This document shows, piece by piece, positions 14,421 through 52,882 of a stretch of DNA of 64,000 nt. Where the stretch lies: assembly GCA_002269645.1 (NCBI GenBank), contig NIVC01000958.1, positions 186,001 through 250,000 of the forward strand, given 5' to 3'. The first letter of the stretch is position 1, and the number at the start of each line of letters is the position of its first letter. This stretch comes from Macrostomum lignano (Eukaryota). A program made the position numbers and the translations under genes. Under the pieces are notes generated by a model, which worked only from the letters and a program-made list of their open reading frames with translations, ran no database searches and had not been told where the DNA came from.

Positions 14421-15732
14421 AGAACTGTGCCACAACTTAAGTAGACCAGGTTTTTAAATATGACGGAGCTTATATTTATGCAAAAAATCAGTTCATTTTC
14501 ACCATCAGCTTTTTCAATCTTACAGCTGGATGTAAAATGAGACATGAAATCTGGCTGGCTTCGGGAACGCAACTATTTCTCTTTGATTACCTTAATTCTC
14601 GGTCACTTAAAATATACATGTAGTTTTCCTATTGCATACTTTCCAGATTATTAACGTTCAACTTTCTGATTACCTTAGCCATGCATGATCACGTAGCCAT
14701 CTGATTGCTTAATTCCAGAATTACTTCATTTTTTGCAGGTGTTTTCAGGATGCCTGTACACTCGTGTAAAGCAGTCTACCATTATTCCACACTTATTTCA
14801 CGGTAGTGCAAAAATAATGACGGGTAGATAAGATAACCCACGTGACAAAACACTCACTCCGGGATGGAATTTGCACATAGGGTGAAAGCACAAGTGAGAG
14901 CAACTGTGGAATAATGGACTAAAGTAATTGCTACTGGGCCTGGAAGACAGTATGAAATTCTGATCGGGCAACACTGTGCCCCGTAGAAGCTCAGGCAGCC
15001 GTCTCTATGTAACAACGACGTAAATGAAAGTAACAAAGCAGTAAATGAATTCTAAATAACTAAAATGTACAGAAAGTTTATATATGAAATAGAAATTACA
15101 ATGTCCGATATTTGCAGTGATTTCCGTATATACGAGCGTATGCTACAGAAGCAGCATATTTATGCAGTAATTGTACCAACAACAATGATCCACCCACTAA
15201 GCAGCTATATTTTATTCACATTTTACTGTATGTTGTAAATGAAGTTTTCTATCCAACCACACGTGATTTGTACAGGTGAAACTTTTTCTGTTCTTGATTA
15301 TACTCGCGTATTTAGCAGCATTTCTCTCTCTATATTCGGATTCAAATGAGAGATTTAAGGCAGCGAACTCGCATTCTTAATAAAGCCGTTTAAGAGGCAA
15401 TTATAAATATTGTACTTATAGTTTATATATCAGGTAGTTAACAACAGCAGCAAAAATCCAAGGTACAGTGTCTGTTGGATCTTCCGATGAAGAATTGAAA
15501 CTGAATTTCGAGCTATCAGACTCCGGAATCATGGATAATTTAGTCTCTGTTGCTAGCTCTGTTATTGGCAGTTCAGACTGAGATGATTAGAGAGACAAAA
15601 TGCGAGTTCGAAGGCTTTCAAGCTGTTTTATGTGTGCGCTGTAGCCTTGGTCAGGTTGACAGGGATGGGTGCTGCAGGGTGTTGCGTCACTCCGTCCACA
15701 TTAGGCATTCCGCTGTGACGTCCAAGGCGCAG

Positions 15733-18700
15733 TCACCCGTTACGAACGAGAGGTTTTTCAGAGTCGGATTGGCAAACCGCCTCAAACCTTCCTCCATTTT
15801 CAACCGGGCTTGCGCCCGGATTTGCCGAAATTGCGGCTATATATTGAAGGCTGTGCCGTCGTCTCATAAAAAGTAGCATCAAAGCAAGCAGAAGTGCCAA
15901 TATAATTCCAACAGGGGTCCCAAGTAGAACCATAATCAGCCTCATTCTTATAGGATTGGCACTTGTTTGTTTTTCCTTAACCAGCCGTGTCCCACTCGTG
16001 AGGCCATTCTATCCTCGGAAAACACGGCCTTGCAGCCCAGTAATGAATGCAGCGGTGTAGCGCTGCATGTATTTCTGGCTTTATTTTACGTTGTATTTAA
16101 TACATTTGCGCACGTATGCACCAGCCGGTTCTATAAGCCACCGTGGGTGATATTGGTAAACAAGTGTACAATTCAAATTGCATTTTAGCTAGCTATTAAA
16201 ATAAGCCTGCCTATACATAAAATTTTACCACTTGCCAATTAGTTAGGCTTAGATTTATTTATTGCTCTTTAGACTTTGGAATCATTTAAAATTTACATAA
16301 CTATATCCTATTTTTTGTTTAGCCTAGGCAAAATGCATATTTAATAAGCTTTCTAGGCTTCTAAAATCTAATAGCAATAGATAAAAACTACCTACCTAGT
16401 AATTTTTTACCTAATAGTAATACAAAGCCTTCTATTTCAAATCATTGATTATTTTCTACTATTGACTAGTAGGTCTAAGTCTAAAATATTTTCTTTTCTT
16501 TTGTGTTATAAAGCCTTTATGCTATATTAGAATATGTTTTTTAATGATAATAAGATTAAGAATCTTTTTTTTTCTTTGGATCTAAAATTCATTTGGTCCT
16601 TCTTTAATTTAAGTAGCTTAGGCCTATCTTTTTATAAGACCTAAGCCTAGCCTATGTTTATAATGTATTATATTAAAATGTTTTAATAATATTGTTTTAT
16701 GGGAATCAAAAGTAGGAATATAACTATATAAGATAAAGCATGCCTAAAATAAAAATCTTTTTGAAATAATTAGCCATAGTCTAATCAACTATAGACTAAG
16801 TAATAACTATTCATTGCCACTATATAAAGTCATGATATCCCTCTAGTTGTGACCTTTTCTTCCCCTCTAATGCTAGGCCTTACCTTTTTCTTTCTAGCCC
16901 ATATTCTCTTCTCTAAAGCCTCACCTTCTTTTCCCTTCAGTATTACCCTCCTCCCCAGTCCCACAATGTTTTCCCATTAAATTCTTACCCTTTTTTCATA
17001 ATCTCACTCTCCTACCCTCTAGCCCCACCTTCCTAGCCTCTAGTCCCACTATCCTTCCCTCCAGCCCCACCCTCCTTCCCTCTAGCCCCGCCCTCCCTTC
17101 CAGCTTCCACCCTTTTCTCTCCTCTGGACCAATCCCTTCTCTCTAGCCCCACCCCTTCCTTCCAGCCCCACCCATTCCCTCCAGCCCTACCTCTTCCCTC
17201 CAGCCCCTCCCCTTCCCTCCAGCCCCACCCCTTTCCTCTAGCCCCAACCCTCCCCTCCAGCTTCCACCCTCTTCTCCCCTCTAGCCCAACCCTCTTACCC
17301 TCTAGCCCCACCCTCTTTCCCTCCAGCCCCACCCTCCTACCCTCTAGCCCCACCCTCCTTCCCTCCAGCCCCACCCTCCTACTCTCTAGCCCCACCCTCC
17401 TTCCCTCCAGCCCCACCCTCTTCTCTTCTGTAGCCCCACCCCACCCCCTTCCCTCCAGCCCCACCCTCCTACCCTCTAGCCCTGCCCTCCCTTCCAGCTT
17501 CCACCCTCTTCTCCTCTCCAGCCCCACCCTCCTACCCTCCAGCCCCACCCTCCTACCCTCTAGCCCCACCCTCCTACCCTCTAGCCCTGCCCTCCCTTCC
17601 AGCTTCCACCCTCTTCTCCCCTCCAGCCCCACCCTCCTACCCTCCAGCCCCACCCTCCTACCCTCCAGCCCCACCCTCCTACCCTCCAGCCCCACCCTCC
17701 TACCCTCTAGCCCCACCCTCCTTCCCTCCAGCCCCAACCTCCTACTCTCTAGCCCCACCCTCCTTCCCTCCAGCCCCACCCTCCTTCCCTCCAGCCCCAC
17801 CCTCTTCTCTTCTGTAGCCCCACCCCACCCCCTTCCCTCCAGCCCCACCCTCCTACCCTCTAGCCCTGCCCTCCCTTCCAGCTTCCACCCTCTTCTCCCC
17901 TCCAGCCCCACCCTCCTACCCTCCAGCCCCACCCTCCTACCCTCTAGCCCCACCCTCCTACCCTCTAGCCCTGCCCTCCCTTCCAGCTTCCACCCTCTTC
18001 TCCCCTCCAGCCCCACCCTCCTACCCTCCAGCCCCACCCTCCTACCCTCCAGCCCCACCCTCCTACCCTCTAGCCCCACCCTCCCCTCCAGCTTCCACCC
18101 TCTTCTCCCTCCAGCCCCACCCTCCTACCCTCCAGCCCCACCCTCCTACCCTCCAGCCCCACCCTCCTACCCTCCAGCCCCACCCTCCTACCCTCTAGCC
18201 CCACCCTCCCTCCAGTTTCCAACCTCTTCTCCTTTCTAGCCCCACCCTCCCCTCCAGTTTCCAACCTCTTCTCCCCTCCAGCCTCACCCTCTTCTCCCCT
18301 CCAGCCCCACCCTCCTACCCTCTAGCCCTACCCTCCCTTCAAAATTCCACCCTCTTCTCCCCTCCAGCACCACCCCCTTCCCTCCAGCCCCACCCTCCTA
18401 CCCTCTAGCCCCACCCCCTTCCCTCCAGCCCCACCCTCCTACCCTCTAACCCCACCCTCCCCTCCAGTTTCCAACCTCTTCTCCCCTCCAGCCTCACCCT
18501 CCTCCCCTCCAGACCCACCCCCTTCCCTCCAGCCCCACCCTCCTACCCTCTAGCCCCACCCTCCCCTCCAGCTTCCAACCTCTTCTCCCCTCCAGCCTCA
18601 CCCTCTTCCCTCCAGACCCACCCTCCTACCCTCCAGACCCACCCTCCTTCCCTCCAGCCCCACCCTCCTTCCCTCCAGCCCCACCCTCCTACCCTCTAGC

Positions 18701-21700
18701 CCCACCCTCCCCTCCAGCTTCCACCCTCTTCGCCCTCTAGCCCCACCCTATTTTCCTATTCAGCCTCACCCTTTCTCGTAGCTCTGCTAATAAAATTTAA
18801 TTATCCTTTTCAGAAGTGAAAAATAATATTTCTCTTTTCTCTCTTCAGAATGTCCTCGCACCGGTCTTGAGGTCATACCACGTGCCGGAGCGACTGGTCG
18901 CAGCAACCATAACTCTCTTCTAGGAGACCCTGGCCGCCGTGGTGACACCTGACGGACTATCCGACCTGTTCAAAACGACCTCAGGGATGCTGCAAGGCGA
19001 CACGCTTGCGTCCAACCGTTTCGTGTTGGTGCTCGATGGGGTGCTACGTAGGGCCCTGCCAACAGATGAGGACAGCTTCCTACTGTGCCGGCAAACAAGC
19101 AGCCGCCAATCGGAGAAGCGGCTGTCACTCATGGGTTACGCCGACGACCTGGCGCTGCCCGCCTCTACGGCTGAGGGAGCTCAGCGCATGCTAGACAGCC
19201 TGGTTGGTGGCAGCTGCGGCATCGGTCGGGCTAGCGGTGAACATCGAGAAGACGGAGGTGATGACTGTACCTGCGGAGCTGCCTATCAAAATCACCTGCT
19301 GGGACACCCGACGGTCATGCAGCAGCTCTACCTCGCTGCGTGTGCTTCACGTACCCCGGCGATCTTGTGCCCAGTGTCCAGGAGGACTTGGCGCGACGCA
19401 GGGGCCTGGCCTGGGCGGCCTTCCGCTCCATCCGAGTCCGTCCTGCAGAACGCCGCGCTGCCAGACTGCTGCGATCACCTAGCGAGACCCTCCGCAGGCG
19501 AAGACATCAGCTGGCGGGCCACACCATCCACGCGGAGGCCTACTGTTCTCAACCAGTGCAAGACGTCCTGCTGCTCACGATGCAGGGCCCCTGGCGCCGG
19601 GGCTACGGCCGGGCGAGTCGCGTCGCGGATTGCCTGTTGGATGGCGCTGGGGTGATTGGCCAGGCGCACGCTGTTGCCGCCTTTAGAGAGCTCGCACTGA
19701 GAGAACTGATCTGACATTGCCTCCCATTGTGAACTGTTACTTTTAACTCAACAATACTGGGTGTGCCTTGTTGTTATTTTCTCTTCAAAAAAATTTGCCT
19801 AGCTGCGAACTGTGATGGTGCATATCGCGTACTCGTGATTCAATAGCTTATACTTATTACTGTTTTACTTATTGCCTTCCGATGTCAATGCTATTTATTG
19901 CGTGTAATATTATCGCAAAATTTAAGTTCGGGTGTCATTATTTAGCTACTGCCGCTGTTCTGCATTACAATTATTATAGTACTTCCTATCTACTGACGTA
20001 ACATTGTACCAAAAATTTTACATTGCGTGGCGCCAAAACCAATCTTGTTGAATGCTACTAGCGTAATAGCCGTTTGAATCGCTTGAAATACATTGTAATG
20101 CCATGCTGTATTGCTTTTGACGATCTAAACGACACTGGCTAGACTTCACTGATCCATATGCTCCTCAAGCAAGGTATATGGAATGCAGATTGAGCAGCAA
20201 ACTTAGTGTTTGATTGATAGAGATATTGTATAGTTGGATTTTGGATCACGGATAGAACCAAGGAATCTAGATCTGGAGGCATGGAGGCATGCGGGGGGAG
20301 CCGCCGAAAGCAGCGGAGCTGTTGGGGGGAGCGGCGGAAAGCAGCGGAGCTGTTGGGGGAGCGGCGGAAAGCAGCGGAGCTATTGGTGGAAGTGGCGGAA
20401 AGCAGCGGAGCTGTTGGGGGGAGCGGCGGAAAGCAGCGGAGCTGTTGGGGGGAGCGGCGGAAAGCAGCGGAGCTGTTGGGGGAGCGGCGGAAAGCAGCGG
20501 AGCTATTGGTGGAAGTGGCGGAAAGCAGCGGAGCTGTTGGGGGGAGCGGCGGAAAGCAGCGGAGCCGTTGGGGGGAGCGACGGAAAGCAGCGGAGCTGTT
20601 GGGGGAGCGGCGGAAAGCAGCGGAGCTGTTGGGGAGCGGCGGAAAGCAGCGGAGCTATTGGTGGAAGTGGCGGAAAGCAGCGGAGCTGTTGGGGGGAGCG
20701 GCGGAAAGCAGCGGAGCTATTGGTGGAAGTGGCGGAAAGCAGCGGAGCTGTTGGGGGAGCGGCGGAAAGCAGCGGAGCTATTGGTGGAAGTGGCGGAAAG
20801 CAGCGGAGCTGTTGGGGGGAGCGGCGGAAAGCAGCGGAGCTGTTGGGGGAGCGGCGGAAAGCAGCGGAGCTGTTGGGGGAGCGGCGGAAAGCAGCGGAGC
20901 TGTTGGGGGAGCGGCGGAAAGCAGCGGAGCTGTTGGGGGGAGCGGCGGAAAGCAGCGGAGCTGTTGGGGGGAGCGGCGAAAAGCAGCGAAACTATTGGTG
21001 GAAGTGGCGGAAAGCAGCGGAGCTGTTGGGGGGAGCGGCGGAAAGCAGCGGAGCTGTTGGGGGGAGCGGCGGAAAGCAGCGGAGCTGTTGGGGGGAGCGG
21101 CGGAAAGCAGCGGAGCTGTTGGGGGGAGCGGCGGAAAGCAGCGGAGCTGTTGGGGGAGCGGCGGAAAGCAGCGGAGCTGTTGGGGGAGCGGCGGAAAGCA
21201 GCGGAGCTATTGGTGGAAGTGGCGGAAAGCAGCGGAGCTGTTGGGGGAGCGGCGGAAAGCAGCGGAGCTATTGGTGGAAGTGGCGGAAAGCAGCGGAGCT
21301 GTTGGGGGGAGCGGCGGAAAGCAGCGGAGCTGTTGGGGGAGCGGCGGAAAGCAGCGGAGCTGTTGGGGGAGCGGCGGAAAGCAGCGGAGCTGTTGGGGGG
21401 AGCGGCGGAAAGCAGCGGAGCTATTGGTGGAAGTGGCGGAAAGCAGCGGAGCTGTTGGGGGAGCGGCGGAAAGCAGCGGAGCTATTGGTGGAAGTGGCGG
21501 AAAGCAGCGGAGCTGTTGGGGGAGCGGCGGAAAGCAGCGGAGCTGTTGGGGGAGCGGCGGAAAGCAGCGGAGCTGTTGGGGGAGCGGCGGAAAGCAGCGG
21601 AGCTGTTGGGGGAGCGGCGGAAAGCAGCGGAGCTGTTGGGGGAGCGGCGGAAAGCAGCGGAGCTGTTGGGGGAGCGGCGGAAAGCAGCGGAGCTGTTGGG

Positions 21701-24700
21701 GGAGCGGCGGAAAGCAGCGGAGCTGTTGGGGGAGCGGCGGAAAGCAGCGGAGCTGTTGGGGGAGCGGCGGAAAGCAGCGGAGCTGTTGGGGAGCGGCGGA
21801 AAGCAGCGGAGCTGTTGGGGAGCGGCGGAAAGCAGCGGAGCTGTTGGGGGAGCGGCGGAAAGCAGCGGAGCTATTGGTGGAAGTGGCGGAAAGCAGCGGA
21901 GCTGTTGGGGGGAGCGGCGGAAAGCAGCGGAGCTATTGGTGGAAGTGGCGGAAAGCAGCGGAGCTGTTGGGGGGAGCGGCGGAAAGCAGCGGAGCTGTTG
22001 GGGGGAGCGGCGGAAAGCAGCGGAGCTGTTGGGGGAGCGGCGGAAAGCAGCGGAGCTGTTGGGGGAGCGGCGGAAAGCAGCGGAGCTATTGGTGGAAGCG
22101 GCGGAAAGCAGTGGAGCTGTTGGTTTGATAACAGCTGACAGGCTTATTTGCATAGAGCGATGCTATGAGAATGAATTCAGTTAGTCAGTTTAAGGCAGAA
22201 TGCTGGCTCTCTGCCTCTGCCTACCCTTCAACTGAATCGAGTGAACTCGCAGTGCCTGAAGTGCCCGAAGTTGGTTCTACATGTACGTATGCATATTGTT
22301 TTGGCAAACTGGATTACAAACAGGTACGGCTCATATATTACAGTGTACTACATGTATTTGAGTGGCGAATTGGTGACGGTTTAAATGTTACTAGGGCTAC
22401 GTGTATGTGACCCGGCCGGTGCTCTACTACCTTGAATTCATGCCCGTAAGGCTCAGCCTCCGATCATTTACTAATTATTTAATGTCGCGAGAGGGGACTC
22501 TCAGTCCCCAACATCCTGCATGGTATTTAGGGGCCTAGGGTCTTGTCCTTGGGGCCTTCGACAAGTGACTGCCGCAATTTGACTGGGGACTATGAACTCT
22601 AAACATTGGCACCTCAAGATTAGAGCGGCGGCACTCGAACCAAAATAATGTTGAAGGACTACAGAATACATGCTGTATATATAGCTACGTACATGTAACG
22701 CATCTTACACTCAATGTATCAATGTTACATGTACAGTATCCAATACCATGCTAAAAGAGCACGTAACTTCTGAATGTACAGTGTACATATAGCAGGCGTG
22801 AGGGCATTAAAGATATTCTTCCATCTATACCGAGGGTCATCTCAAAAGTTTCATTAAACACTTATTAATTTTCAACAAACGAGTTTCAGAACAGTGAACA
22901 GCTCAAAAACCTTTAAAATAACTTCCGTTGGTTTGAATCATGCGCTACCAGCAGCCAGGCAACTTGTGGACGCCGTCAGCAGCGCCAGATTCGCACAGGT
23001 CTTTTGCAATGCGGCCGATCTCGCTGCCTGGATGCTGGTTCCCTTGAATACCCTTGAAGCTGGTTTTTAAGCTTTGGGAAAGGCTAAAATCGCAGGGACT
23101 GAGGTCTGGGGAGTAAGTAGGATGAGGCAGCACCTCCCACTGATAGTCCCGCAGTAGGTCCTGCACAATGCGGGCTGTGTGCGAACTGGCATTGTCGTGC
23201 GGAAGGAGTGGACCAAGTTCCAGGGTCTGGCCGCTTTTTGCGCAAGGCAGGCCGAAGATGGTGGGTGGGGAAGCTCCGATAAAACTTTGGTTGATGTTTT
23301 GGCCCTCAGAAATGCGGTGGATGAGAATAATGCCAAAACTGTCGTAGCATGCGATGATCATCAGTTTGTCGGCTCCCTTGGCGCGCCGCAAAACTGATGG
23401 TCTCAGTGGCTGGGCAGAATTTTTCGACTGCCACTCGGAATTCTGGCTCTTGAGGTTGGGCTAAATGAGCTAGCTTCTCTCTGTTCTATATGATCTCGTA
23501 TACATGTAGCTGCATGGCAGCTTTCAAACATTTCGTAAAAGGTGCCCCAGTTCCAACTTACGTCATATTCAACTTAAGAATATGATACCTGACCCGACCA
23601 GTCTTATACAAGTTTCTCGTAAAAGTTGCCAATGCCCTATACCCTAGAAGACATTGACTTGTTGATTCTTAGTAGATCTTGTCTATCTTCCTGGGTTGCT
23701 GCGCAAGTACTTGCAAGAACGTGCAAGATCTTCGCTATAATAATACTTAGGTAAACCTAGATCTGGGCGACTTGCTACATCGTACAAGAGCTTAGCTTTT
23801 ATATCCTTTTAGAGCTTCGAATCGCATATTTTCTTAAATTTATTGTTCCTTTTTGTCATAAAATAAATATAGTTCAGCTAGAACACTTTAGCGAAATGAA
23901 TTACAAAGCAAATGTACCTCCCATCTTAGAAGATCCTGCAAGAACCGAGCAGATTGAGAAGATCTGCTAAGAATGGCACAGAGACAAGATCTGCTAAGTT
24001 TGAGAAACAGAATGTCCTCTAGGGTATCCCCTCAACTTCCCCTACTATTTTCTGTCTCCTCTCTGCTCTCGCATATTTCTACTCTACTCCTAACAGGATC
24101 ATATTTAGATGTATACATGTATAGCTAAAGCAGCAACTCGGTCCTCAGAAGCATCCCCTCATCATTCCCCTCTGAGGGATATCAACAAGCTGGATTCGGA
24201 TTTCAACATTAGGAATCAGGGATATAAGGGAATTAACAATCGGGGATTGAGATTTAGAAATGAAAATGAAAATGAAAATTGGGGATTGAGATTAAAAAAA
24301 TATCTAAATGAACTAGCTTCTCTCTATTTTATGATATACATGTATTCTGTAGTCCTTCAACATTATTTTGGTTCGAGTGCCGCCGCTCTAATCTTGAGGT
24401 GCCAATGTTTAGAGTTCATAGTCCCCAGTCAAATTGCGGCAGTCACTTGTCGAAGGCCCCAAGGACAAGACCCTAGGCCCCCTAAATACCATGCAGGATG
24501 TTGGGGACTGAGAGTCCCCTCTCGCGACATTAAATAATTAGTAAATGATCGGAGGCTGAGCCTTACGGGCATGAATTCAAGGTAGTAGAGCACCGGCCGG
24601 GTCACATACACGTAGCCCTAGTAACATTTAAACCGTCACCAATTCGCCACTCAAATACATGTAGTACACTGTAATATATGAGCCGTACCTGTTTGTAATC

Positions 24701-27700
24701 CAGTTTGCCAAAACAATATGCATACGTACATGTAGAACCAACTTCGGGCACTTCAGGCACTGCGAGTTCACTCGATTCAGTTGAAGGGTAGGCAGAGGCA
24801 GAGAGCCAGCATTCTGCCTTAAACTGACTAACTGAATTCATTCTCATAGCATCGCTCTATGCAAATAAGCCTGTCAGCTGTTATCAAACCAACAGCTCCA
24901 CTGCTTTCCGCCGCTTCCACCAATAGCTCCGCTGCTTTCCGCCGCTCCCCCAACAGCTCCGCTGCTTTCCGCCGCTCCCCCAACAGCTCCGCTGCTTTCC
25001 GCCGCTCCCCCCAACAGCTCCGCTGCTTTCCGCCGCTCCCCCAACAGCTCCGCTGCTTTCCGCCACTTCCACCAATAGCTCCGCTGCTTTCCGCCGCTCC
25101 CCCCAACAGCTCCGCTGCTTTCCGCCACTTCCACCAATAGCTCCGCTGCTTTCCGCCGCTCCCCCAACAGCTCCGCTGCTTTCCGCCGCTCCCCCAACAG
25201 CTCCGCTGCTTTCCGCCGCTCCCCCCAACAGCTCCGCTGCTTTCCGCCGCTCCCCCAACAGCTCCGCTGCTTTCCGCCGCTCCCCCAACAGCTCCGCTGC
25301 TTTCCGCCGCTCCCCCAACAGCTCCGCTGCTTTCCGCCGCTCCCCCAACAGCTCCGCTGCTTTCCGCCGCTCCCCCAACAGCTCCGCTGCTTTCCGCCGC
25401 TCCCCCAACAGCTCCGCTGCTTTCGGCGGCTCCCCCCGCATGCCTCCATGCCTCCAGATCTAGATTCCTTGGTTCTATCCGTGATCCAAAATCCAACTAT
25501 ACAATATCTCTATCAATCAAACACTAAGTTTGCTGCTCAATCTGCATTCCATATACCTTGCTTGAGGAGCATATGGATCAGTGAAGTCTAGCCAGTGTCG
25601 TTTAGATCGTCAAAAGCAATACAGCATGGCATTACAATGTATTTCAAGCGATTCAAACGGCTATTACGCTAGTAGCATTCAACAAGATTGGTTTTGGCGC
25701 CACGCAATGTAAAATTTTTGGTACAATGTTACGTCAGTAGATAGGAAGTACTATAATAATTGTAATGCAGAACAGCGGCAGTAGCTAAATAATGACACCC
25801 GAACTTAAATTTTGCGATAATATTACACGCAATAAATAGCATTGACATCGGAAGGCAATAAGTAAAACAGTAATAAGTATAAGCTATTGAATCACGAGTA
25901 CGCGATATGCACCATCACAGTTCGCAGCTAGGCAAATTTTTTTGAAGAGAAAATAACAACAAGGCACACCCAGTATTGTTGAGTTAAAAGTAACAGTTCA
26001 CAATGGGAGGCAATGTCAGATCAGTTCTCTCAGTGCGAGCTCTCTAAAGGCGGCAACAGCGTGCGCCTGGCCAATCACCCCAGCGCCATCCAACAGGCAA
26101 TCCGCGACGCGACTCGCCCGGCCGTAGCCCCGGCGCCAGGGGCCCTGCATCGTGAGCAGCAGGACGTCTTGCACTGGTTGAGAACAGTAGGCCTCCGCGT
26201 GGATGGTGTGGCCCGCCAGCTGATGTCTTCGCCTGCGGAGGGTCTCGCTAGGTGATCGCAGCAGTCTGGCAGCGCGGCGTTCTGCAAGACGGACTCGGAT
26301 GGAGCGGAAGGCCGCCCAGGCCAGGCCCCTGCGTCGCGCCAAGTCCTCCTGGACACTGGGCACAAGATCGCCGGGGTACGTGAAGCACGCGCAGCGAGGT
26401 AGAGCTGCTGCATGACCGTCGGGTGTCCCAGCAGGTGATTTTGATAGGCAGCTCCGCAGGTACAGTCATCACCTCCGTCTTCTCGATGTTCACCGCTAGC
26501 CCGACCGATGCCGCAGCTGCCACCAACCAGGCTGTCTAGCATGCGCTGAGCTCCCTCAGCCGTAGAGGCGGGCAGCGCCAGGTCGTCGGCGTAACCCATG
26601 AGTGACAGCCGCTTCTCCGATTGGCGGCTGCTTGTTTGCCGGCACAGTAGGAAGCTGTCCTCATCTGTTGGCAGGGCCCTACGTAGCACCCCATCGAGCA
26701 CCAACACGAAACGGTTGGACGCAAGCGTGTCGCCTTGCAGCATCCCTGAGGTCGTTTTGAACAGGTCGGATAGTCCGTCAGGTGTCACCACGGCGGCCAG
26801 GGTCTCCTAGAAGAGAGTTATGGTTGCTGCGACCAGTCGCTCCGGCACGTGGTATGACCTCAAGACCGGTGCGAGGACATTCTGAAGAGAGAAAAGAGAA
26901 ATATTATTTTTCACTTCTGAAAAGGATAATTAAATTTTATTAGCAGAGCTACGAGAAAGGGTGAGGCTGAATAGGAAAATAGGGTGGGGCTAGAGGGGCG
27001 AAGAGGGTGGAAGCTGGAGGGGAGGGTGGGGCTAGAGGGTAGGAGGGTGGGGCTGGAGGGAAGGAGGGTGGGCTGGAGGGAAGGAGGGTGGGTCTGGAGG
27101 GTAGGAGGGTGGGTCTGGAGGGAAGAGGGTGAGGCTGGAGGGGAGAAGAGGTTGGAAGCTGGAGGGGAGGGTGGGGCTAGAGGGTAGGAGGGTGGGGCTG
27201 GAGGGAAGGGGGTGGGTCTGGAGGGGAGGAGGGTGAGGCTGGAGGGGAGAAGAGGTTGGAAACTGGAGGGGAGGGTGGGGTTAGAGGGTAGGAGGGTGGG
27301 GCTGGAGGGAAGGGGGTGGGGCTAGAGGGTAGGAGGGTGGGGCTGGAGGGAAGGGGGTGGTGCTGGAGGGGAGAAGAGGGTGGAATTTTGAAGGGAGGGT
27401 AGGGCTAGAGGGTAGGAGGGTGGGGCTGGAGGGGAGAAGAGGGTGAGGCTGGAGGGGAGAAGAGGTTGGAAACTGGAGGGGAGGGTGGGGCTAGAAAGGA
27501 GAAGAGGTTGGAAACTGGAGGGAGGGTGGGGCTAGAGGGTAGGAGGGTGGGGCTGGAGGGTAGGAGGGTGGGGCTGGAGGGTAGGAGGGTGGGGCTGGAG
27601 GGTAGGAGGGTGGGGCTGGAGGGGAGAAGAGGGTGGAAGCTGGAGGGGAGGGTGGGGCTAGAGGGTAGGAGGGTGGGGCTGGAAGGTAGGAGGGTGGGGC

Positions 27701-30700
27701 TGGAGGGGAGAAGAGGGTGGAAGCTGGAGGGGAGGGTGGGGCTAGAGGGTAGGAGGGTGGGCTGGAGGGTAGGAGGGTGGGGCTGGAGGGTAGGAGGGTG
27801 GGGCTGGAGGGAGAAGAGGGTGGAAGCTGGAAGGGAGGGCAGGGCTAGAGGGTAGGAGGGTGGGGCTAGAGGGTAGGAGGGTGGGGCTGGAGGGTAGGAG
27901 GGTGGGGCTGGAGGGGAGAAGAGGGTGGAAGCTGGAAGGGAGGGCAGGGCTAGAGGGTAGGAGGGTGGGGCTGGAGGGAAGGGGTGGGGTGGGGCTACAG
28001 AAGAGAAGAGGGTGGGGCTGGAGGGAAGGAGGGTGGGGCTGGAGGGAAGGAGGGTGGGGCTAGAGAGTAGGAGGTTGGGGCTGGAGGGAAGGAGGGTGGG
28101 GCTAGAGGGTAGGAGGGTGGGGCTGGAGGGTAGGAGGGTGGGGCTGGAGGGTAGAAGGGTGGGGCTGGAGGGTAGGAGGGTGGGGCTGGAGGGGAGAAGA
28201 GGGTGGAAGCTGGAAGGGAGGGCAGGGCTAGAGGGTAGGAGGGTGGGGCTAGAGGGTAGGAGGGTGGGGCTGGAGGGTAGGAGGGTGGGGCTGGAGGGGA
28301 GAAGAGGGTGGAAGCTGGAAGGGAGGGCAGGGCTAGAGGGTAGGAGGGTGGGGCTGGAGGGAAGGGGGTGGGGTGGGGCTACAGAAGAGAAGAGGGTGGG
28401 GCTGGAGGGAAGGAGGGTGGGGCTGGAGGGAAGGAGGGTGGGGCTAGAGAGTAGGAGGTTGGGGCTGGAGGGAAGGAGGGTGGGGCTAGAGGGTAGGAGG
28501 GTGGGGCTGGAGGGTAGGAGGGTGGGGCTGGAGGGTAGGAGGGTGGGGCTGGAGGGTAGGAGGGTGGGGCTGGAGGGGAGAAGAGGGTGGAAGCTGGAAG
28601 GGAGGGCAGGGCTAGAGTGTAGGAGGGTGGGGCTAGAGGGAAGGAGGGTGGGGCTAGAGGGTAGGAGGGTGGGGCTGGAGGGAAGGAGGGTGGGGCTAGA
28701 GGGTAGGAGGGTTGGGCTAGAGGGGAGAAGAGGGTGGAAGCTGGAGGGGAGGGTTGGGGCTAGAGGAAAGGGGTGGGGCTGGAGGGAAGGGGAGGGGCTG
28801 GAGGGAAGAGGTAGGGCTGGAGGGAATGGGTGGGGCTGGAAGGAAGGGGTGGGGCTAGAGAGAAGGGATTGGTCCAGAGGAGAGAAAAGGGTGGAAGCTG
28901 GAAGGGAGGGCGGGGCTAGAGGGAAGGAGGGTGGGGCTGGAGGGAAGGATAGTGGGACTAGAGGCTAGGAAGGTGGGGCTAGAGGGTAGGAGGGTGAGAT
29001 TATGAAAAAAGGGTAAGAATTTAATGGGAAAACATTGTGGGACTGGGGAGGAGGGTAATACTGAAGGGAAAAGAAGGTGAGGCTTTAGAGAAGAGAATAT
29101 GGGCTAGAAAGAAAAAGGTAAGGCCTAGCATTAGAGGGGAAGAAAAGGTCACAACTAGAGGGATATCATGACTTTATATAGTGGCAATGAATAGTTATTA
29201 CTTAGTCTATAGTTGATTAGACTATGGCTAATTATTTCAAAAAGATTTTTATTTTAGGCATGCTTTATCTTATATAGTTATATTCCTACTTTTGATTCCC
29301 ATAAAACAATATTATTAAAACATTTTAATATAATACATTATAAACATAGGCTAGGCTTAGGTCTTATAAAAAGATAGGCCTAAGCTACTTAAATTAAAGA
29401 AGGACCAAATGAATTTTAGATCCAAAGAAAAAAAAAGATTCTTAATCTTATTATCATTAAAAAACATATTCTAATATAGCATAAAGGCTTTATAACACAA
29501 AAGAAAAGAAAATATTTTAGACTTAGACCTACTAGTCAATAGTAGAAAATAATCAATGATTTGAAATAGAAGGCTTTGTATTACTATTAGGTAAAAAATT
29601 ACTAGGTAGGTAGTTTTTATCTATTGCTATTAGATTTTAGAAGCCTAGAAAGCTTATTAAATATGCATTTTGCCTAGGCTAAACAAAAAATAGGATATAG
29701 TTATGTAAATTTTAAATGATTCCAAAGTCTAAAGAGCAATAAATAAATCTAAGCCTAACTAATTGGCAAGTGGTAAAATTTTATGTATAGGCAGGCTTAT
29801 TTTAATAGCTAGCTAAAATGCAATTTGAATTGTACACTTGTTTACCAATATCACCCACGGTGGCTTATAGAACCGGCTGGTGCATACGTGCGCAAATGTA
29901 TTAAATACAACGTAAAATAAAGCCAGAAATACATGCAGCGCTACACCGCTGCATTCATTACTGGGCTGCAAGGCCGTGTTTTCCGAGGATAGAATGGCCT
30001 CACGAGTGGGACACGGCTGCCTTAACCGACAGGGCAGCCGCAAGCATCCAGCTGAGCACAGGTTGGCTCGATTTTCCGCATCTGTTTCCGGCCGCATCCG
30101 GGAAGCTGATCAGAGCCGGAAGCTGCTCACTGCAGTCCGTAAAGCTCACCAGTCCGAGCACCTCGCCATCAATGGTAAGATTGATAGCTCTGAGTGAACC
30201 GCAGGAGACTGACAAGTTCGTACTCTGGACAGTATGGTGTCTGGAATTCAAGTGTAAAGAGTTGTGAAATTTGATTTAATTAGCGAGCCAATTGTTCTCA
30301 TAGCAGATGAACTGCTATTCTCAACTTAAGAAACTCACAGCTTATCAGCATCCTCGAACTCAGCCATTTTGCAGCCAGCTTCTGCACCGCAGTTCAGGTA
30401 GAAGACCTTCTTGGTCATGTGCTCATAGAACAGTCCGATGCGAAGCCTCTGTGCGAGATTCAGCGGCTCCTTGATGCGGGTGCTCAGGCCGGAGCCGACG
30501 CGAGTTCGCTGGCCTGAAGCCGGTGTTCAAGTGGAGTGAAATTGTGCGAGAGTTAAGCTGTGCTGTCTACAATCCAAAGTAAACAGCGATGTTCAATAGT
30601 GGACACTGTGCGTGATAAACTGATAATGATAATGGCAATGAACGCCATGTAGATTCTACTTCAAGTTAGTATTGCAGGCGTGGAATATGCATCTCTAGTA

Positions 30701-33700
30701 GTGCGTTACCGCACCTATTTACTGAGATTTACTGAACACAGCAGTGCTCGGCACTGTACGAGCGTAGTAATTTACTACAATTTAATAGTTTGAGCGCGGG
30801 CGAACAGCCGCCCCAAATGAATCACCGCCGGCTTATAAGCACACAGAGCAACCACCCCCAACCAACACCGACCCCAAGGCCAAGCTGGGCTGGCTGACTA
30901 AAGCCGGTTTACACTGCCGCAACAAACCCGTGCATAATAAGTAAACCATTTTTGACTCCACGAATTGTTTTAAAAGCCACCGGTTCACTCCAGCTTACTC
31001 TCTGTGACGAAGTTCTGCAGAGCCGCGGAGCTGTTGAAGCTGGCGAGCCTCATGACTCCGCTGTCAGCGCTCATCGCAGCCAGCTCAGCAGTCAGGGACC
31101 GACGAACCGGTCCAGTGGTGTAGCAGTTGCTCTCAAAATTAGTCATGCTTCTGCCGCAGAACCCCGGCTCCATCAGGCGAATTTGCAGAGCCGGGATATA
31201 CGCTGAGCTTCTCCGATTCAGCCAGAATGAGACCGTCAGGTAGCTCCTACAGTTTGATGTAGAGTGCAGTGATTAGTTTCGAGTAAGAAATTGATTTAAA
31301 AAAACTTTTTTCAGCATCGGCCCAGCTCTCTCGTACCCTTTCGTCAGTTGCAGCACGCGCAGCATCTCCAGCTCCACGGGCTTTGGCTCGCTTGTTGAAG
31401 GCGACGAGCAAGTTGCTGGAGATGCATTGGGGTTTGTAATGGCACATAAGAAATGAAAGCATTTGACCGGTTTTATTGAGTTCAAGCTAGCAGTCAGCAG
31501 TATGGGTCAACAACCACACAGACTGCTCGTTCACAGATATGGTTAGAATTGGAAGTTGAAAACCAATAATTTAACTACATGTTTAACTGTGCTCAAAGCG
31601 CTCTGCTTACAGTCCGAAGCATTCGAGTGCAGTTCGTATCGCATCAGTTGATGCTGTGTAGGCGAGTCCACAGATCGTGTCCACCTCTGCTGTTTAACGT
31701 GAGCCTCCGTGTCAAAGCCAGTCAGAACCACTACGACTTTGTCAAGATGGTCAGTCAGAATCTTCCATTTGCAGTTGAGGCCTTCCTCAGGCACAGGGTC
31801 TGCGTCAGTTTTAGGAATGATTCGATCTTCAGTGAACTCAAGGCTGAGCTGGATCTCATTGGTGTTGCCACGGGGAAAGCAGTACTGGTTGCCTGCCAGA
31901 GCGCTGTGGATAAGAACGGGCGGGACAGTAGATTTGGTGTGGTAAATTTAGTGTTGAAAGTTAATGCAGACGCATCCTATTTATGATCTTAGGTAAGATA
32001 TACGCAAAATATTAAATACTTAGTTTTGTGGCATTGTGGTGAGTAGCTAAGAGATTTTAGAAATGAAAGAAATGACATCGAAACTTTGGTAAAATTGTTG
32101 TTTTGCTTTTACCCTTAGCAATCAGTATGATGACCCAATCAGTATGATGACCCAATCAGTAGGATGACCCAATCAGTATGATGACCCAATCAGTATGATG
32201 ACCCAATCAGTATGATGACCCAATCAGTATGATGACCCAATCAGTATGATGACCCAATCAGTATGATGACCCAATCAGTATGATGACCCAATCAGTATGA
32301 TGACCCAATCAGTATGATGACCCAATCAGTATGATGACCCAATCAGTATGATGACCCAATCAGTATGATGACCCAATCAGTATGATGACCCAATCAGTAT
32401 GATGACCCAATCAGTATGATGACCCAATCAGTATGATGACCCAAATCAGTATGATGACCCAATCAGTATGATGACCCAATCAGTATGATGACCCAATCAG
32501 TATGATGACCCAATCAGTATGATGACCCAATCAGTATGATGACCCAATCAGTATGATGACCCAATCAGTATGATGACCCAATCAGTATGATGACCCAATC
32601 AGTATGATGACCCAATCAGTATGATGACCCAATCAGTATGATGACCCAATCAGTATGATGACCCAATCAGTATGATGACCCAAATCAGTATGATGACCCA
32701 ATCAGTATGATGACCCAATCAGTATGATGACCTAAATCAGTATGATGACCCAATCAGTATGATGACCCAATCAGTATGATGACCTAAATCAGTATGATGA
32801 TCCAATCAGTATGATGACCCAATCAGTATGATGACCCAATCAGTATGATGACCCAATCAGTATGATGACCCAAATCAGTATGATGACCCAATCAGTATGA
32901 TGACCCAATCAGTATGATGACTCAATCAGTATGATGACCCAATCAGTATGATGACCCAATCAGTATGATGACCCAATCAGTATGATGACCCAATCAGTAT
33001 GATGACCCAAATCAGTATGATGACCCAATCAGTATGATGACCCAACCAGTATGATGACCCAATCAGTATGATGACCCAATCAGTATGATGACCCAATCAG
33101 TATGATGACCCAATCAGTATGATGACCCAATCAGTATGATGACCCAAATCAGTATGATGACCTAAATCAGTATGATGATCCAATCAGTATGATGACCCAA
33201 TCAGTATGATGACCCAATCAGTATGATGACCCAATCAGTATGATGACCCAATCAGTATGATGACCCAATCAGTATGATGACCCAATCAGTATGATGACCC
33301 AATCAGTATGATGACCCAATCAGTATGATGACCCAATCAGTATGATGACCCAATCAGTATGATGACCCAATCAGTATGATGACCCAATCAGTATGATGAC
33401 CCAATCAGTATGATGACCCAATCAGTATGATGACCCAATCAGTATGATGACCCAATCAGTATGATGACCCAATCAGTATGATGACCCAATCAGTATGATG
33501 ACCCAATCAGTATGATGACCCAATCAGTATGATGACCCAATCAGTATGATGACCCAATCATTATGATGATCCAATCAGTATGATGACCCAATCAGTATGA
33601 TGACCCAATCAGTATGATTCACCCCAAGCAAAAACCGGATTCCGCAACAGAAATTCCAGCTGGTGCAAGAAATTAAGCGTCGCATCACTCACATTTGAAA

Positions 33701-33748
33701 TGTGGCAGACAGCAGCAGAAGAGTCGCCAGGCTTCTGCCAATCGCCAT
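15733..33748 (-). CDS. CUB-like + CTLD + TM receptor family, copy B/C, interrupted by the foldback element
   Basis: Exons 33748-33693 (MAIGRSLATLLLLSATFQ signal peptide), 31903-31611, 31415-31337, 31246-30999, 30513-30339, and 30240-30020 + 15974-15733. Intron phases 2,1,2,1,2 are consistent and there are no stops. CUB-like motifs: NCKWKILTD..VVVVLTGFDTE and GSYLTVSF. CTLD-like motifs: C...FESNCY, LASFNS, LRIGLF and C..DC. TM segment: MRLIMVLLGTPVGIILALLLALMLLFM-RRR. Confidence 0.85.
17008..18750. repeat. 21-bp-based polypyrimidine minisatellite (CCCTCCAGCCCCACCCTCCTA), left arm
   Basis: Tandem units with variant blocks. Produces the artefactual LEGRRVG ORFs. Confidence 0.95.
18846..19720 (+). 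pseudogene. Decayed non-LTR retrotransposon RT fragment (RTE/RTE-X-like), left arm
   Basis: GMLQGDTLA..FVLVLD..LR, GYADDLAL, VGLAVNIEKTEVM and F.Y.G..V.S..EDLARRRGLAWAAF are spread over three frames. In-frame TAG at 18921-18923. Confidence 0.85.
20290..22125. repeat. ~30-bp G-rich satellite (GCGGCGGAAAGCAGCGGAGCTGTTGGGGGA), left arm, ~60 copies
   Basis: Tandem units with a variable G-run and a TATTGGTGGAAGTGG variant. All three frames are open, which is a repeat artefact. Confidence 0.95.
22829..23455 (-). pseudogene. Mariner (DD34D) transposase 3' fragment with probable TIR
   Basis: KLMIIACYD..GI, HDNASSH and YSPDLSPCDF are present, with 34 residues between the last two catalytic Asp. A TA-CCGAGGGTCATCTCAAAAGTTTC TIR-like end lies at ~22828-22852. 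The fragment is frameshifted and 5'-truncated. Confidence 0.85.
24895..25435. repeat. Same 30-bp satellite, right arm, ~18 copies
   Basis: Reverse complement of 20290-22125 but about 1.3 kb shorter. Confidence 0.95.
26010..26885 (-). pseudogene. Mirror copy of the RTE-like RT fragment, right arm
   Basis: ORFs mirror 18939-19717 (coordinate sum 45730), with the same stop codon at 26807-26809. Confidence 0.85.
26980..28995. repeat. 21-bp-based polypurine minisatellite, right arm
   Basis: Mirror of 17008-18750 but about 270 bp longer. Confidence 0.95.
32119..33617. repeat. 17-bp minisatellite (AATCAGTATGATGACCC), ~88 copies, in intron 1 of copy B/C
   Basis: Near-perfect tandem units with occasional CAAATC/CTAAATC variants. 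Confidence 0.97.
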
Positions 33749-34675
33749 CTGCAGATTCAGTCGCATGTCGCTCGCTTCCGGCACCTAAAAATCGCGATGT
33801 GAGGTGGACGCTGCATGCAGGAGATTGTGTGTCCGCTCAGCATTTATAGGTAAAGACGTGAAACTGCCGAACAAGCTGGATATTCGTAAATGCCATCAAA
33901 CTTCTAGTACACGTACGAGCCTACTTCTAATTTAAGTATTTTAGTGTTTTAGTACCCGGATGTAGTGACACAATTAACTTGGCTGTTTGTTAACCCAACC
34001 CTGAGACCAAGGAATTTCACATGCAATAAGCGTCTAGATTTGACTTTTTATTTGATTTTAAATATAAAATTGCATCTGCTGAGACAGACTCAGCCTTTGG
34101 TCTGACTTTCATGAGCATAATTATATTCTAGTGACTCTAATGAACCCCTGTAGCTATGATACTACATGCATTACAAAGAAATCTAATCAATCAATCAATC
34201 AATCAATCAAATCAATCAGTTGAATACGAAAATCATTTAGCAATCGAAGTACAATACACAATACACAGCCCTAATCAAACGACAGTAGAAAGTTCCGTGG
34301 GAACAAAAAATATTTTGTTTAACATTCTTAACTACTATTTTTTCTTCATTCTATCTTTCCTTAAACAAATATTATTTGACAAAAGAGGACACTTTAACAT
34401 TGCCATCAAATAATGCTCAAATTTCTTAAAAATTATGGTAACTAAGTGTGCACGAAACTCAACTCACTGTCCATGTGGACTCATACTCACCAAGAGATGT
34501 TGGCCAACTCCAGCTTCTTGCAGACTTTATAAGAGAAAATTTAGGAAGGGAGCACCACGGAAAACCCATGATTTTACAGGCCAACTCTGTGGCAGATCCA
34601 AGAAAAATCCAAGTAAACCCACGGCTTTTCCGCGGCTCCAATAACACCTAACGGCCGTGGGCTAGCCAGACAATC
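33620..34675. repeat. Paralogous exon 1/upstream region, homologous to 4130-5162
   Basis: Collinear identity blocks, e.g. TGGTAACTAA.TGTGCACGAAACTCAACTCACTGTCCATGTGGACTC and ACGGCCGTGGGCTAGCCAGACAATC. Confidence 0.9.
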
Positions 34676-37720: not shown

Positions 37721-38451
37721 GTCGGCTCCGGCCTGAGCACCCGCATCAAGGAGCCGCTGAATCTCGCACAGAGGCTTCGCATCGGACTGTTCTATGAGTA
37801 CAGGACCAAGAAGGTCTTCTACCTGAACTGCGGGGCAGAAGCTGGCTGCAAAATGATGGAGTTCGAGGATGCTGATAAGCTGTGAGTTTCTTAAGTTGAG
37901 AATAGTAGTTTATCTGCTATGAGAACAATTGGCTCGCTAATTAAATCAAATTTCACAACTCTTTACATTTGAATTCCAGACACCATACCGTCCAGAGTAC
38001 GAACTCCTCAGTTTTCTGTGGTTCACTCAGAGCTGTCGATCTTACCATTGATGGTGACGTACTCGGGCAGGTGAGCTTTACGGACTGCAGTGAGCATCTT
38101 CCGGCTCTGATCAGCTTCCCGGATGCGACCGGAAACAGATGCGGAGACTCGAGCCAACCTGTGCTCAGCTGGATGCATGCGGCTGCCCAGCCGGCTGCGG
38201 AAGAAGAACAAACAAGTCCCAAACCTAAAAGGATGAGGCTGGTTTTGGTTCTACTTGTGGTTTCTGGTGCGATTCTATTGCTAGTTCTCTCTACTTTAAC
38301 GCCAATGAGACGACGGCACAGCCTTAAATATAAAGCAGCAACTCCACCAAAGTCGGACCAAAGCCCGGTCAAAAGAGGAGGAGGGTTTGAAGTGGTCTGC
38401 CAATCCAACTCTGAAAAACCTCTGGTTCGTAACGGGGGCTGCTGTAACTGA
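37719..38451 (+). pseudogene. CUB-CTLD-TM copy D: 3' fragment only (partial exon 5 + exon 6)
   Basis: Exon 5 is cut mid-exon at the satellite (37719-37881). Exon 6 (37980-38451) is identical to copy F. Confidence 0.85.
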
Positions 38452-52795: not shown

Positions 52796-52882
52796 GTAAC
52801 TTATTTTCTGACAGCAAAATATTCTGACAGCAAATATTGTACCTGGCGGCTTATATCGTAATTTTACAAGCCCGAAGACGAC

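What the first reader, a model, noticed from the sequence alone, without database searches (positions are those of the whole stretch)
29801..30240. The insertion could convert a membrane receptor into a secreted CUB-lectin
Seen: the element sits after the complete CTLD and just before the TM helix, and exons 1-5 are intact. On the minus strand the frame runs ...SWMLAAALSVK-AAVSHS* into the TIR (TGA at 30000-30002). An ATTAAA follows about 200 nt later (29801-29806). Inference: rather than a knockout, the allele may encode a soluble or decoy form using a TE-supplied stop and poly(A) signal.
Basis: partly seen in the sequence, partly recalled or inferred. Interest (0 to 1): 0.7.

Follow-up and report, generated by a model that had tools for sequence, protein, structure and literature searches.

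The report
Foldback transposon truncates flatworm receptor gene
A 14-kb foldback transposon sits in the last coding exon of one copy of a flatworm-specific membrane-protein gene; that copy could at most encode an anchor-less, secretable ectodomain, but nothing in the sequence shows the product is made or used, so it is most likely an ordinary gene disruption.

Summary
The window is Macrostomum lignano DNA (Mlig_3_7 contig NIVC01000958.1, 186001-250000). On the minus strand, one paralogue ("copy B") of a Macrostomum-only family has five intact exons with canonical splice sites. Its exon 6 is split at 30020/30019 by a 14,038-bp foldback-type DNA transposon (15982-30019). The transposon has perfect CAG...CTG ends and a 7-bp target-site duplication. 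An uninterrupted relative supplies a gap-free empty site.

The reading frame runs ...SVK-AAVSHS-TGA (30002-30000), and ATTAAA lies at 29806-29801. The insertion falls 13 codons before the TM helix. A structure model and fold and profile searches support the architecture signal peptide-CUB-CTLD-TM. Pfam finds neither domain, and no sugar-binding motif is present.

The predicted product is 369 aa with no TM segment. The stop lies in the last coding exon, so it would probably escape NMD. The soluble form is therefore mechanistically possible.

However, the stop and the ATTAAA are what chance gives in this AT-rich terminus. No transcript or protein evidence could be obtained. The insertion looks recent. 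The cluster also holds pseudogenes and gene fragments. The most likely reading is a nascent pseudogene or loss of the membrane form, with any secreted ectodomain incidental. Interest is low.

The parts
33693..33766 (-). Copy B exon 1: ATG and signal peptide (MRLNLQMAIGRSLATLLLLSATFQ...), donor GTGAGT
   Evidence: aligns with the N-termini of P0001-P0006
32119..33618 (.). 17-mer satellite (CAATCAGTATGATGACC, about 88 copies) inside intron 1 of copy B
   Evidence: the same satellite occurs with other lengths in intron 1 of paralogues in L002 and L003
31611..31903 (-). Exon 2: N-terminal part of the CUB-like domain (YCFPRG...NCKWKILTDHLDKVVVVLTGFDTE...)
   Evidence: fold match to neuropilin and Neto CUB domains
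31337..31415 (-). Exon 3: middle of the CUB-like domain (TCSSPSTSEPKPVELEMLRVLQLTKG)
30999..31246 (-). Exon 4: end of the CUB-like domain and start of the CTLD (FCGRSMTNFESNCY...LASFNSS...), donor GAGA|GTAAGC
   Evidence: PDB profile hits to CD69 and DC-SIGN align here
30339..30513 (-). Exon 5: middle of the CTLD (...RLRIGLFYEHMTKKVFYLNCGAEAGCKMAEFEDADK)
30020..30240 (-). Exon 6, upstream part: end of the CTLD (SCGSL...FTDCSEQLPALISFPD) and a short juxtamembrane helix, up to ...SWMLAAALSVK. The last 7 nt (30026-30020) are the upstream copy of the target-site duplication.
   Evidence: model strands 305-341 and helix 353-363 of the paralogue
30000..30019 (-). TE tip read in frame: (G)CA GCC GTG TCC CAC TCG TGA = AAVSHS*, stop at 30002-30000
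29801..29806 (-). ATTAAA, the first poly(A)-signal-like hexamer, 196 nt after the TE stop. Use as a poly(A) signal is untested.
   Evidence: chance-level
15982..30019 (.). 14,038-bp foldback-type non-autonomous DNA transposon. Tips are CAGCCGTGTCCC...GGGACACGGCTG. The arms are near-perfect inverted repeats. Outer unique parts 15982-17004 / 28997-30019 are 1023/1023 identical. The 21-mer arrays lie at 17005-18749 / 26981-28996. Mid unique parts 18750-20293 / 25437-26980 are 1542/1544 identical. The 30/31-mer arrays lie at 20294-22123 / 24889-25436. Inner unique parts are 549/550 identical. The central loop at 22673-24338 is not palindromic.
22948..23460 (-). Degenerate Tc1/mariner-type transposase fragment (…LLPHDNASSHTA…PHPTYSPDLSPCDF…) in the central loop. 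It is not an intact transposase and does not fit the element's 7-bp duplication.
   Evidence: Pfam DDE_3, E=1.9e-4, below the gathering score
15975..15981 (-). Downstream copy of the 7-bp target-site duplication (GTTAAGG on the gene strand)
15733..15974 (-). Exon 6, downstream part, now severed: stalk, TM helix (codons 376-400, 15939-15865), RRRH stop-transfer signal and cytoplasmic tail. Native stop TGA at 15735-15733.
15211..15216 (-). Probable native poly(A) signal AATAAA, 519 nt after the native stop. Conserved at the same position in the closest relative (L004 12595).

Best explanation
Copy B is one member of a Macrostomum-specific family of type I membrane proteins: signal peptide, CUB-like domain, C-type-lectin-like domain, short helix, TM helix, short tail. 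The family forms a tandem and inverted, birth-and-death gene cluster.

A 14-kb non-autonomous foldback DNA transposon inserted recently into the last coding exon of copy B, in the juxtamembrane stalk. The cut-and-paste integration made a 7-bp target duplication. It separated the ectodomain-coding part from the TM and tail part by 14 kb of near-perfect palindrome.

Shown by the sequence:
- The membrane-anchored product of this copy is lost.
- The only long ORF left ends six codons into the transposon.

Inferred:
- The allele is a loss-of-function or nascent pseudogene, buffered by many intact paralogues and homeologues.
- If its promoter still fires, transcripts will either end at one of several A/T-rich hexamers in the first kilobase of the element or run on into the palindrome.
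- Ending early would give an NMD-immune mRNA for a 369-aa anchor-less ectodomain that would be secreted.
- Running on would form a long hairpin RNA that would probably be destroyed.
- Any secreted ectodomain would be an accidental by-product, not an evolved decoy.
For: Organism and family:
- All homologues are M. lignano proteins.
- The window matches NIVC01000958.1 at 100%.

Architecture:
- The AF2 model has pLDDT 75.4.
- Foldseek hits go to neuropilin and Neto CUB domains and to many CTLDs, with TM-score up to 0.72.
- A PDB profile search returned 23 hits, all CTLDs, best E=1.7e-4.

Real and recent transposition:
- The tips are unique and identical.
- The 7-bp duplication is perfect, and two relatives give a gap-free empty site.
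- The arms are 1023/1023, 1542/1544 and 549/550 identical.
- The copy B ORF is otherwise intact with canonical splice sites.
- Its dN/dS against paralogues (0.60-0.75) lies inside the family range of 0.6-0.9.

Loss of the anchor:
- The truncated ORF has no TM segment.
- The pre-insertion ORF has a TM helix at residues 376-400.

Decaying neighbourhood:
- Copy A has at least two in-frame stops.
- At least six further gene fragments lie in the window.

No sign of exaptation:
- The stop and the ATTAAA are at chance level.
- The native AATAAA is conserved elsewhere.
- No protein matches copy B or the TE tip.
Against: - Nothing excludes that the truncated mRNA and protein are made.
- The promoter flank is conserved.
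- The premature stop is in the last coding exon.
- A poly(A) hexamer followed by T-rich sequence is available 196 nt downstream.
- The missing gene model is uninformative, because repeat-overlapping transcripts were filtered from the annotation.
- "Recent" rests on arm identity, which gene conversion between the arms could also maintain.
- No expression or population data could be examined.
Confidence: 0.6

Rival explanations
1. The insertion has converted the receptor into a functional secreted or decoy CUB-CTLD protein, using the TE-supplied stop and ATTAAA, and this form is biologically used.
For: - All sequence prerequisites are met: signal peptide, folded ectodomain, stop before the TM helix, last-exon position and a nearby hexamer.
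- The promoter flank is conserved.
- The mechanism has precedents in vertebrate immune receptors: IFNAR2 (PMC10515820), IL18R1-Short (PMC13232192) and IL-13Ra1-LOR1a (PMC7617988).
Against: - The stop and the hexamer are chance-level.
- The insertion looks very young, with a perfect duplication and near-identical arms. There has been little time for selection.
- Unlike the precedents, the TE is exonic, so the membrane isoform is abolished rather than supplemented.
- No ligand or function is known for the family.
- No matching protein exists in the databases.
- Neighbouring copies are decaying.
Confidence: 0.07
2. Transcription runs through the element. The two roughly 6.7-kb arms then fold into a very long RNA hairpin, which is diced or edited, so the locus yields small RNAs against the transposon and no stable mRNA.
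For: - The arms are 99.8-100% complementary over their unique parts.
- Only four weak or canonical hexamers lie in the first kilobase, so read-through is plausible.
- M. lignano has active piRNA/PIWI transposon silencing (PMC4604429, listed; the abstract only was seen).
Against: - Read-through of 14 kb that includes about 2 kb of G/C-skewed minisatellite arrays is uncertain.
- No small-RNA data were available.
Confidence: 0.15
3. The element is removed from the pre-mRNA as an intron. The two copies of the duplication offer a donor (TCG|GTTAAG) and an acceptor (GTTAAG|G). Splicing between them would delete 6 nt (Val-Lys) in frame and restore an almost normal membrane protein. The hairpin would bring the two sites together.
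For: - The GT and AG dinucleotides are present at the right places, and the arithmetic is in frame. This is read directly from the junctions.
Against: - The donor has T at +3, and the acceptor has no pyrimidine tract (…GGGACACGGCTGGTTAAG|G).
- All five real introns of the gene use GT[AG]AG/GTACGA donors and pyrimidine-rich acceptors.
- The real introns are 98-1789 nt long, not 14 kb.
Confidence: 0.03
4. The palindromic 14-kb block is an assembly artefact, for example a chimeric long read, and copy B is intact in the animal.
For: - The assembly is PacBio-based, the genome is highly repetitive and neopolyploid, and the authors describe it as hard to assemble (PMC5730564).
- Another near-perfect 8.2-kb inverted duplication lies nearby.
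Against: - A clean 7-bp duplication and CAG...CTG tips sit exactly at the borders.
- The centre is a 1,666-nt non-palindromic loop.
- Array lengths differ between the arms: 1,830 against 548 nt for the 30-mer array.
- Missing-adapter palindromes do not have these features.
Confidence: 0.04

Closest known systems
Transposon-derived truncated or soluble receptor isoforms in vertebrates: IFNAR2-S (PMC10515820), IL18R1-Short from a LINE2 (PMC13232192), IL-13Ra1-LOR1a (PMC7617988)
   Same: TE sequence supplies the stop codon, and possibly the 3' end, upstream of the TM or signalling part. The ligand-binding ectodomain could then be made without its anchor or tail.
   Different: - The vertebrate cases are old intronic retroelements used as alternative terminal exons, so both isoforms coexist. 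They have transcript, protein and functional evidence.
- Here a young DNA transposon sits inside the coding exon and abolishes the membrane form of that copy.
- There is no expression or functional evidence here.
Foldback-type DNA transposons: Drosophila FB, and Galileo/1360 of the P superfamily (compared from my own knowledge, not tested against reference sequences)
   Same: - Very long, nearly identical inverted arms built partly of tandem minisatellites around a short unique centre.
- No transposase of its own.
- A short target-site duplication. Its 7 bp equals that of Galileo.
   Different: - The tips (CAGCCGTG...) are unrelated to those I recall for FB or Galileo.
- FB makes 9-bp duplications.
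- The only transposase-like remnant inside is a Tc1/mariner-type fragment, a type that makes TA duplications and so is probably a passenger.
- The superfamily is unassigned.
CUB-plus-CTLD cell-surface proteins (for example attractin and nematode clec genes; from my own knowledge) and NK-receptor-type CTLDs (CD69, LOX-1, NKR-P1B)
   Same: - A CUB-like beta sandwich followed by a CTLD fold.
- The long-form N-terminal Cys pair (C179-C190) and the C2-C3 pair (C303-C326) are retained.
   Different: - The family is restricted to M. lignano in the databases searched.
- It is too divergent for Pfam CUB or Lectin_C.
- It lacks the C1-C4 disulfide, the WIGL tryptophan and the EPN/QPD and WND sugar/Ca2+ motifs.
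- Ligand and function are unknown.

Membership tests
TE-truncated soluble/decoy receptor | TE sequence terminates the ORF between the ectodomain and the TM helix | tested here: met
   Stop at 30002-30000, six codons into the TE and 13 codons before the TM helix
TE-truncated soluble/decoy receptor | Polyadenylated transcript that ends in the TE | not testable with these tools
   No RNA data. ATTAAA at 29806-29801 is chance-level. No copy B protein in the databases.
TE-truncated soluble/decoy receptor | Secreted protein that binds or antagonises the receptor's ligand | not testable with these tools
   Ligand unknown. Only the lack of a TM segment in the predicted 369-aa product is shown.
TE-truncated soluble/decoy receptor | Full-length membrane isoform still made from the same gene (alternative terminal exon) | tested here: not met
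   The TE is inside the coding exon. The TM-coding part lies 14 kb downstream.
CUB domain | Match to the Pfam CUB profile | tested here: not met
   No hit at E<=10 for copy B and none at E<=0.01 in 34 family members. UniRef names the proteins 'CUB domain-containing'.
CUB domain | CUB beta-sandwich fold | tested here: met
   Foldseek: neuropilin-1/-2 CUB-containing chains at E=4.6e-5 to 7e-4, NRP2 CUB1 alone (6gh8_A) with TMt 0.54, and Neto2. The model is of paralogue P0003, pLDDT 75.
C-type lectin-like domain (CTLD) | Sequence-profile similarity to known CTLDs | tested here: met
   The family profile against PDB gave 23 hits, all CTLDs, best CD69 at E=1.7e-4. The hits cover the N-terminal 45-60 residues of the domain. 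Pfam Lectin_C does not hit.
C-type lectin-like domain (CTLD) | CTLD fold | tested here: met
   Foldseek probability 1.00, TMt 0.55-0.72 to LOX-1, CD69, NKR-P1B, Mincle and CEL-IV
C-type lectin (sugar-binding sense) | Ca2+/carbohydrate motifs EPN or QPD plus WND | tested here: not met
   The motifs are absent from the copy B CTLD sequence (read directly)
Foldback-type DNA transposon | Long inverted arms containing tandem subrepeats, short centre, target-site duplication | tested here: met
Foldback-type DNA transposon | Multiple copies at different genomic sites (mobility as a family) | tested here: inconclusive
   No second copy in the window or in about 100 kb of other M. lignano loci. The whole genome could not be searched.
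hAT or P superfamily | Cognate transposase or diagnostic termini | tested here: inconclusive
   The 7-bp (or 8-bp) duplication and CAG tips are compatible. No such transposase is inside; there is only a mariner-like fragment. No TE reference library was available.

The most novel reading that the evidence does not exclude
A young DNA-transposon insertion has turned one paralogue of a lineage-specific CUB-CTLD membrane receptor into a secreted ectodomain that is expressed and acts as a soluble competitor of its membrane-bound sisters. This would catch receptor-to-secreted-factor conversion by exonic TE truncation at the moment it happens, in a neopolyploid flatworm.
Probability: 0.07. Interest if true: 0.45.

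Novelty: new member of a known kind. Interest (0 to 1): 0.2.

Why it matters
If the truncated ectodomain were expressed and used, this would be an invertebrate, DNA-transposon example of a mechanism so far documented mainly for vertebrate immune receptors and retroelements. It would be seen at a very early stage, with intact homeologues available for comparison.

As it stands, it mainly documents three things:
- a previously undescribed foldback-type element in M. lignano;
- a lineage-specific CUB-CTLD receptor family that is too divergent for Pfam;
- ordinary TE-driven erosion of a redundant gene cluster.

Tried and rejected
- Pfam on single exon ORFs, on the assembled protein and on 34 family members gave no CUB or Lectin_C hit.
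- AlphaFold with the shallow 10-sequence alignment gave pLDDT 37.7 and was discarded. The 34-sequence alignment was needed.
- My first gene model used a wrong exon 4/5 junction. It was corrected from the paralogue proteins.
The model is therefore of copy C (P0003), and no exact look-up of an AAVSHS-terminated product was possible.
- A search with the 68-aa ORF of the TE tip found nothing.
- Paper searches for foldback elements in Macrostomum, for the gene identifiers and in the supplements of the genome paper found nothing useful.
- A piggyBac-like TTAA reading of the junction was considered and rejected. It would need mismatched ends (GGCAG versus CCAG), whereas the 7-bp duplication gives perfect CAG...CTG tips.
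- The absence of a GenBank gene model for copy B was considered as evidence against transcription. It was rejected because of the annotation filter.
Full report
**What the window is.** A homology search with the assembled copy B protein returned only Macrostomum lignano proteins. A locus fetched for one of them (P0003) matches window 51743-64000 at 100%. The window is therefore contig NIVC01000958.1 of assembly GCA_002269645.1 (Mlig_3_7, line DV1), positions 186001-250000. The genome paper describes this genome as more than half repetitive and neopolyploid, with 180 Mb of duplicated blocks at 95% identity or more (PMC5730564).

**The observation.** On the minus strand the frame reads ...SWMLAAALSVK, then AAVSHS, then TGA at 30002-30000. 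ATTAAA lies at 29806-29801, which is 196 nt further on. Exon 6 begins at 30240 behind an AG.

I rebuilt the gene as follows:
- Exons: 33766-33693, 31903-31611, 31415-31337, 31246-30999, 30513-30339 and 30240-30020.
- All have AG...GT[AG]AG or GTACGA borders.
- My first model misplaced one junction. The annotated paralogues showed the right one.
- The spliced product is 84-88% identical to the paralogues, with no frameshift or stop.

**The element.** Positions 15982-30019 (14,038 bp) form an almost perfect palindrome:
- The outer unique kilobase is 1023/1023 identical between the arms.
- The 21-mer arrays follow.
- A 1.5-kb unique segment is 1542/1544 identical.
- The 30/31-mer arrays have different lengths in the two arms, 1,830 against 548 nt.
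- An inner segment is 549/550 identical.
- The centre is a 1,666-nt non-palindromic loop.

The 28-nt tips occur exactly twice in the window, where 0 are expected. The borders read CCTTAAC|CAGCCGTG...CACGGCTG|CCTTAAC on the plus strand. This is a 7-bp duplication with perfect CAG...CTG tips, or 8 bp if one tip base is reassigned.

The closest uninterrupted relative is the P0008 gene in L004, at 93-95% nucleotide identity. Copy C is a second uninterrupted relative. Both align across the site without a gap:
- Copy B without the element: CTGTCG GTTAAGG AAAAAC.
- L004: CAGTCG GCTGCGG AAGAAC.

This is a true transposition event, not an assembly palindrome.

The loop holds only a degenerate Tc1/mariner-type transposase fragment. 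That type does not fit the duplication length, so the fragment is probably a passenger. The element is non-autonomous and of the foldback type. Its superfamily could not be assigned. No second copy lies in the window or in about 100 kb of other M. lignano loci.

**The protein family.** Pfam detects neither CUB nor Lectin_C in copy B or in any of 34 family members. A full-database profile search found 29 relatives. Ten of these were checked by name: nine are M. lignano proteins, and the tenth is a weak hit (E=6e-5) to a pufferfish protocadherin.

With those relatives added:
- The family profile hit 23 PDB chains, every one a CTLD. The best is CD69 at E=1.7e-4, and the hits align to the first 45-60 residues of the domain.
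- AlphaFold on the 34-sequence alignment (first row P0003, which is copy C) gave pLDDT 75.4 and pTM 0.70. The shallow alignment had failed.
- Foldseek matched the N-terminal half to neuropilin and Neto CUB domains.
- Foldseek matched the C-terminal half to LOX-1, CD69, NKR-P1B, Mincle and other CTLDs, with TM-scores up to 0.72.

The model shows a signal-peptide helix, two beta-rich domains, a short helix (353-363) and a TM helix (376-400).

Read directly from the sequence, the CTLD keeps the long-form N-terminal Cys pair and the C2-C3 pair. It has lost C1-C4, the WIGL tryptophan and the EPN/QPD and WND motifs. "Lectin" in the sugar-binding sense is therefore doubtful.

**Where the insertion falls and what it leaves.**
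- The insertion is after codon 363, at the end of the short helix, 13 codons before the TM helix.
- The pre-insertion ORF is 443 aa, with its only strongly hydrophobic segment at 376-400.
- The interrupted ORF is 369 aa, with none beyond the signal peptide.
- The native stop (15735-15733) is in the same exon. A conserved AATAAA lies 519 nt later.
- Exon 6 is therefore the last coding exon. A stop inside the TE would have no exon junction behind it if the transcript ends there, and by established knowledge of EJC-dependent NMD it should be tolerated.
- The 5' flank of copy B (about 870 bp) is 86% identical to the flanks of annotated paralogues.

**Is there any sign that the truncated form is more than an accident?** No.
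- Entering the TE, the three frames stop after 5, 25 and 68 codons.
- 36% of shuffles of the outer kilobase place AATAAA or ATTAAA within 200 nt.
- Hexamer density there is 3.9 per kb against 1.6 per kb window-wide.
- No database protein corresponds to copy B, and none ends in AAVSHS.
- No protein contains the TE-tip ORF.
- The lack of a GenBank gene model does not count against transcription, because repeat-overlapping transcripts were filtered out of that annotation.
- The duplication is perfect and the arms are nearly identical, so the insertion is young.
- dN/dS of copy B against its paralogues (0.60-0.75) lies within the family range of 0.6-0.9. It shows no separate history.
- The neighbourhood is decaying. 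Copy A has at least two in-frame stops, and at least six orphan fragments of the gene lie in the window, some inside an 8.2-kb inverted duplication of 99.98% identity.

**Verdict.** The most likely reading (about 0.6) is a recent disruptive insertion that removes the membrane-anchored product of one redundant paralogue. A secreted 369-aa ectodomain is a possible but incidental by-product.

I put the chance that a stable TE-terminated mRNA exists at roughly one in three. I put the chance that it is a functional decoy at about 0.07.

Other fates:
- Read-through into a 6.7-kb-stem hairpin with degradation or small-RNA production, about 0.15.
- Splicing out through the GT and AG offered by the two duplication copies. 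This is in frame with loss of Val-Lys, but both sites are poor, about 0.03.
- An assembly artefact, about 0.04.

TE-supplied truncation of receptors into soluble or decoy forms is a known mechanism (PMC10515820, PMC13232192, PMC7617988). This case differs in that the TE is an exonic, young DNA transposon, and there is no expression evidence. It is a new member of a known kind, of low interest unless RNA data show otherwise.

Noticed in passing
window 37719-45951 and 54242-62475: An 8.2-kb inverted duplication at 99.98% identity with an 8.3-kb spacer. It carries the 3' part of copy C (P0003) on one arm and an orphan copy of exons 5-6 on the other. The orphan copy is cut off at 37719 by a 16-mer satellite.
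   Followed up: partly
window 1632-3566 (minus strand): Copy A of the same gene is a pseudogene. It has in-frame stops in exon 3 (EPKPV*LEML) and exon 6 (FTDCSE*LLALISF), and a disrupted region just before the TM helix.
   Followed up: partly
window 32119-33618; L002 10172-10520; L003 24277-25520 and 36160-36382: A 17-mer satellite (CAATCAGTATGATGACC) sits in intron 1 of several paralogues, with lengths from about 220 to 1,500 bp. It is absent from copy C. This makes it a length-variable intronic satellite inherited with the gene family.
   Followed up: partly
window 22948-23460 (minus strand): A Tc1/mariner-type transposase remnant (HDNASSHTA...YSPDLSPCDF) lies in the non-palindromic centre of the foldback element. 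It is probably a nested or captured fragment.
   Followed up: partly
window 17005-18749 and 26981-28996: The 21-mer arrays of the element are extremely strand-skewed (AGGGTGGGGCTGGAGGGTAGG, GC skew up to 0.63). On one strand they are runs of G-tracts that could form G-quadruplexes. In the gene orientation, the first array transcribed would be C-rich and the second G-rich.
   Followed up: no
window 36306-37720, 47410-47862 and 49614-51136: There are further minisatellites: a 16-mer (AAGGGGCTTTAGCACC, about 88 copies), a 39-nt-period array and a 21-mer array of about 70 copies. These fit the 15% simple and tandem repeat content reported for this genome.
   Followed up: no
window 30020-30027 and 15975-15981: The duplicated target GTTAAGG happens to offer a GT just upstream of the element and an AG just downstream. 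Splicing between them would excise the whole element with an in-frame 6-nt loss. Both sites are weak.
   Followed up: partly
window 15733-15740 versus L004 (P0008): Copy B has GGG where the P0008 reading frame implies GG at the end of the tail (…PLVRNG). Copy B therefore stops at RNG*, while P0008 continues for about 40 more residues. The cytoplasmic C-termini differ widely among paralogues.
   Followed up: partly
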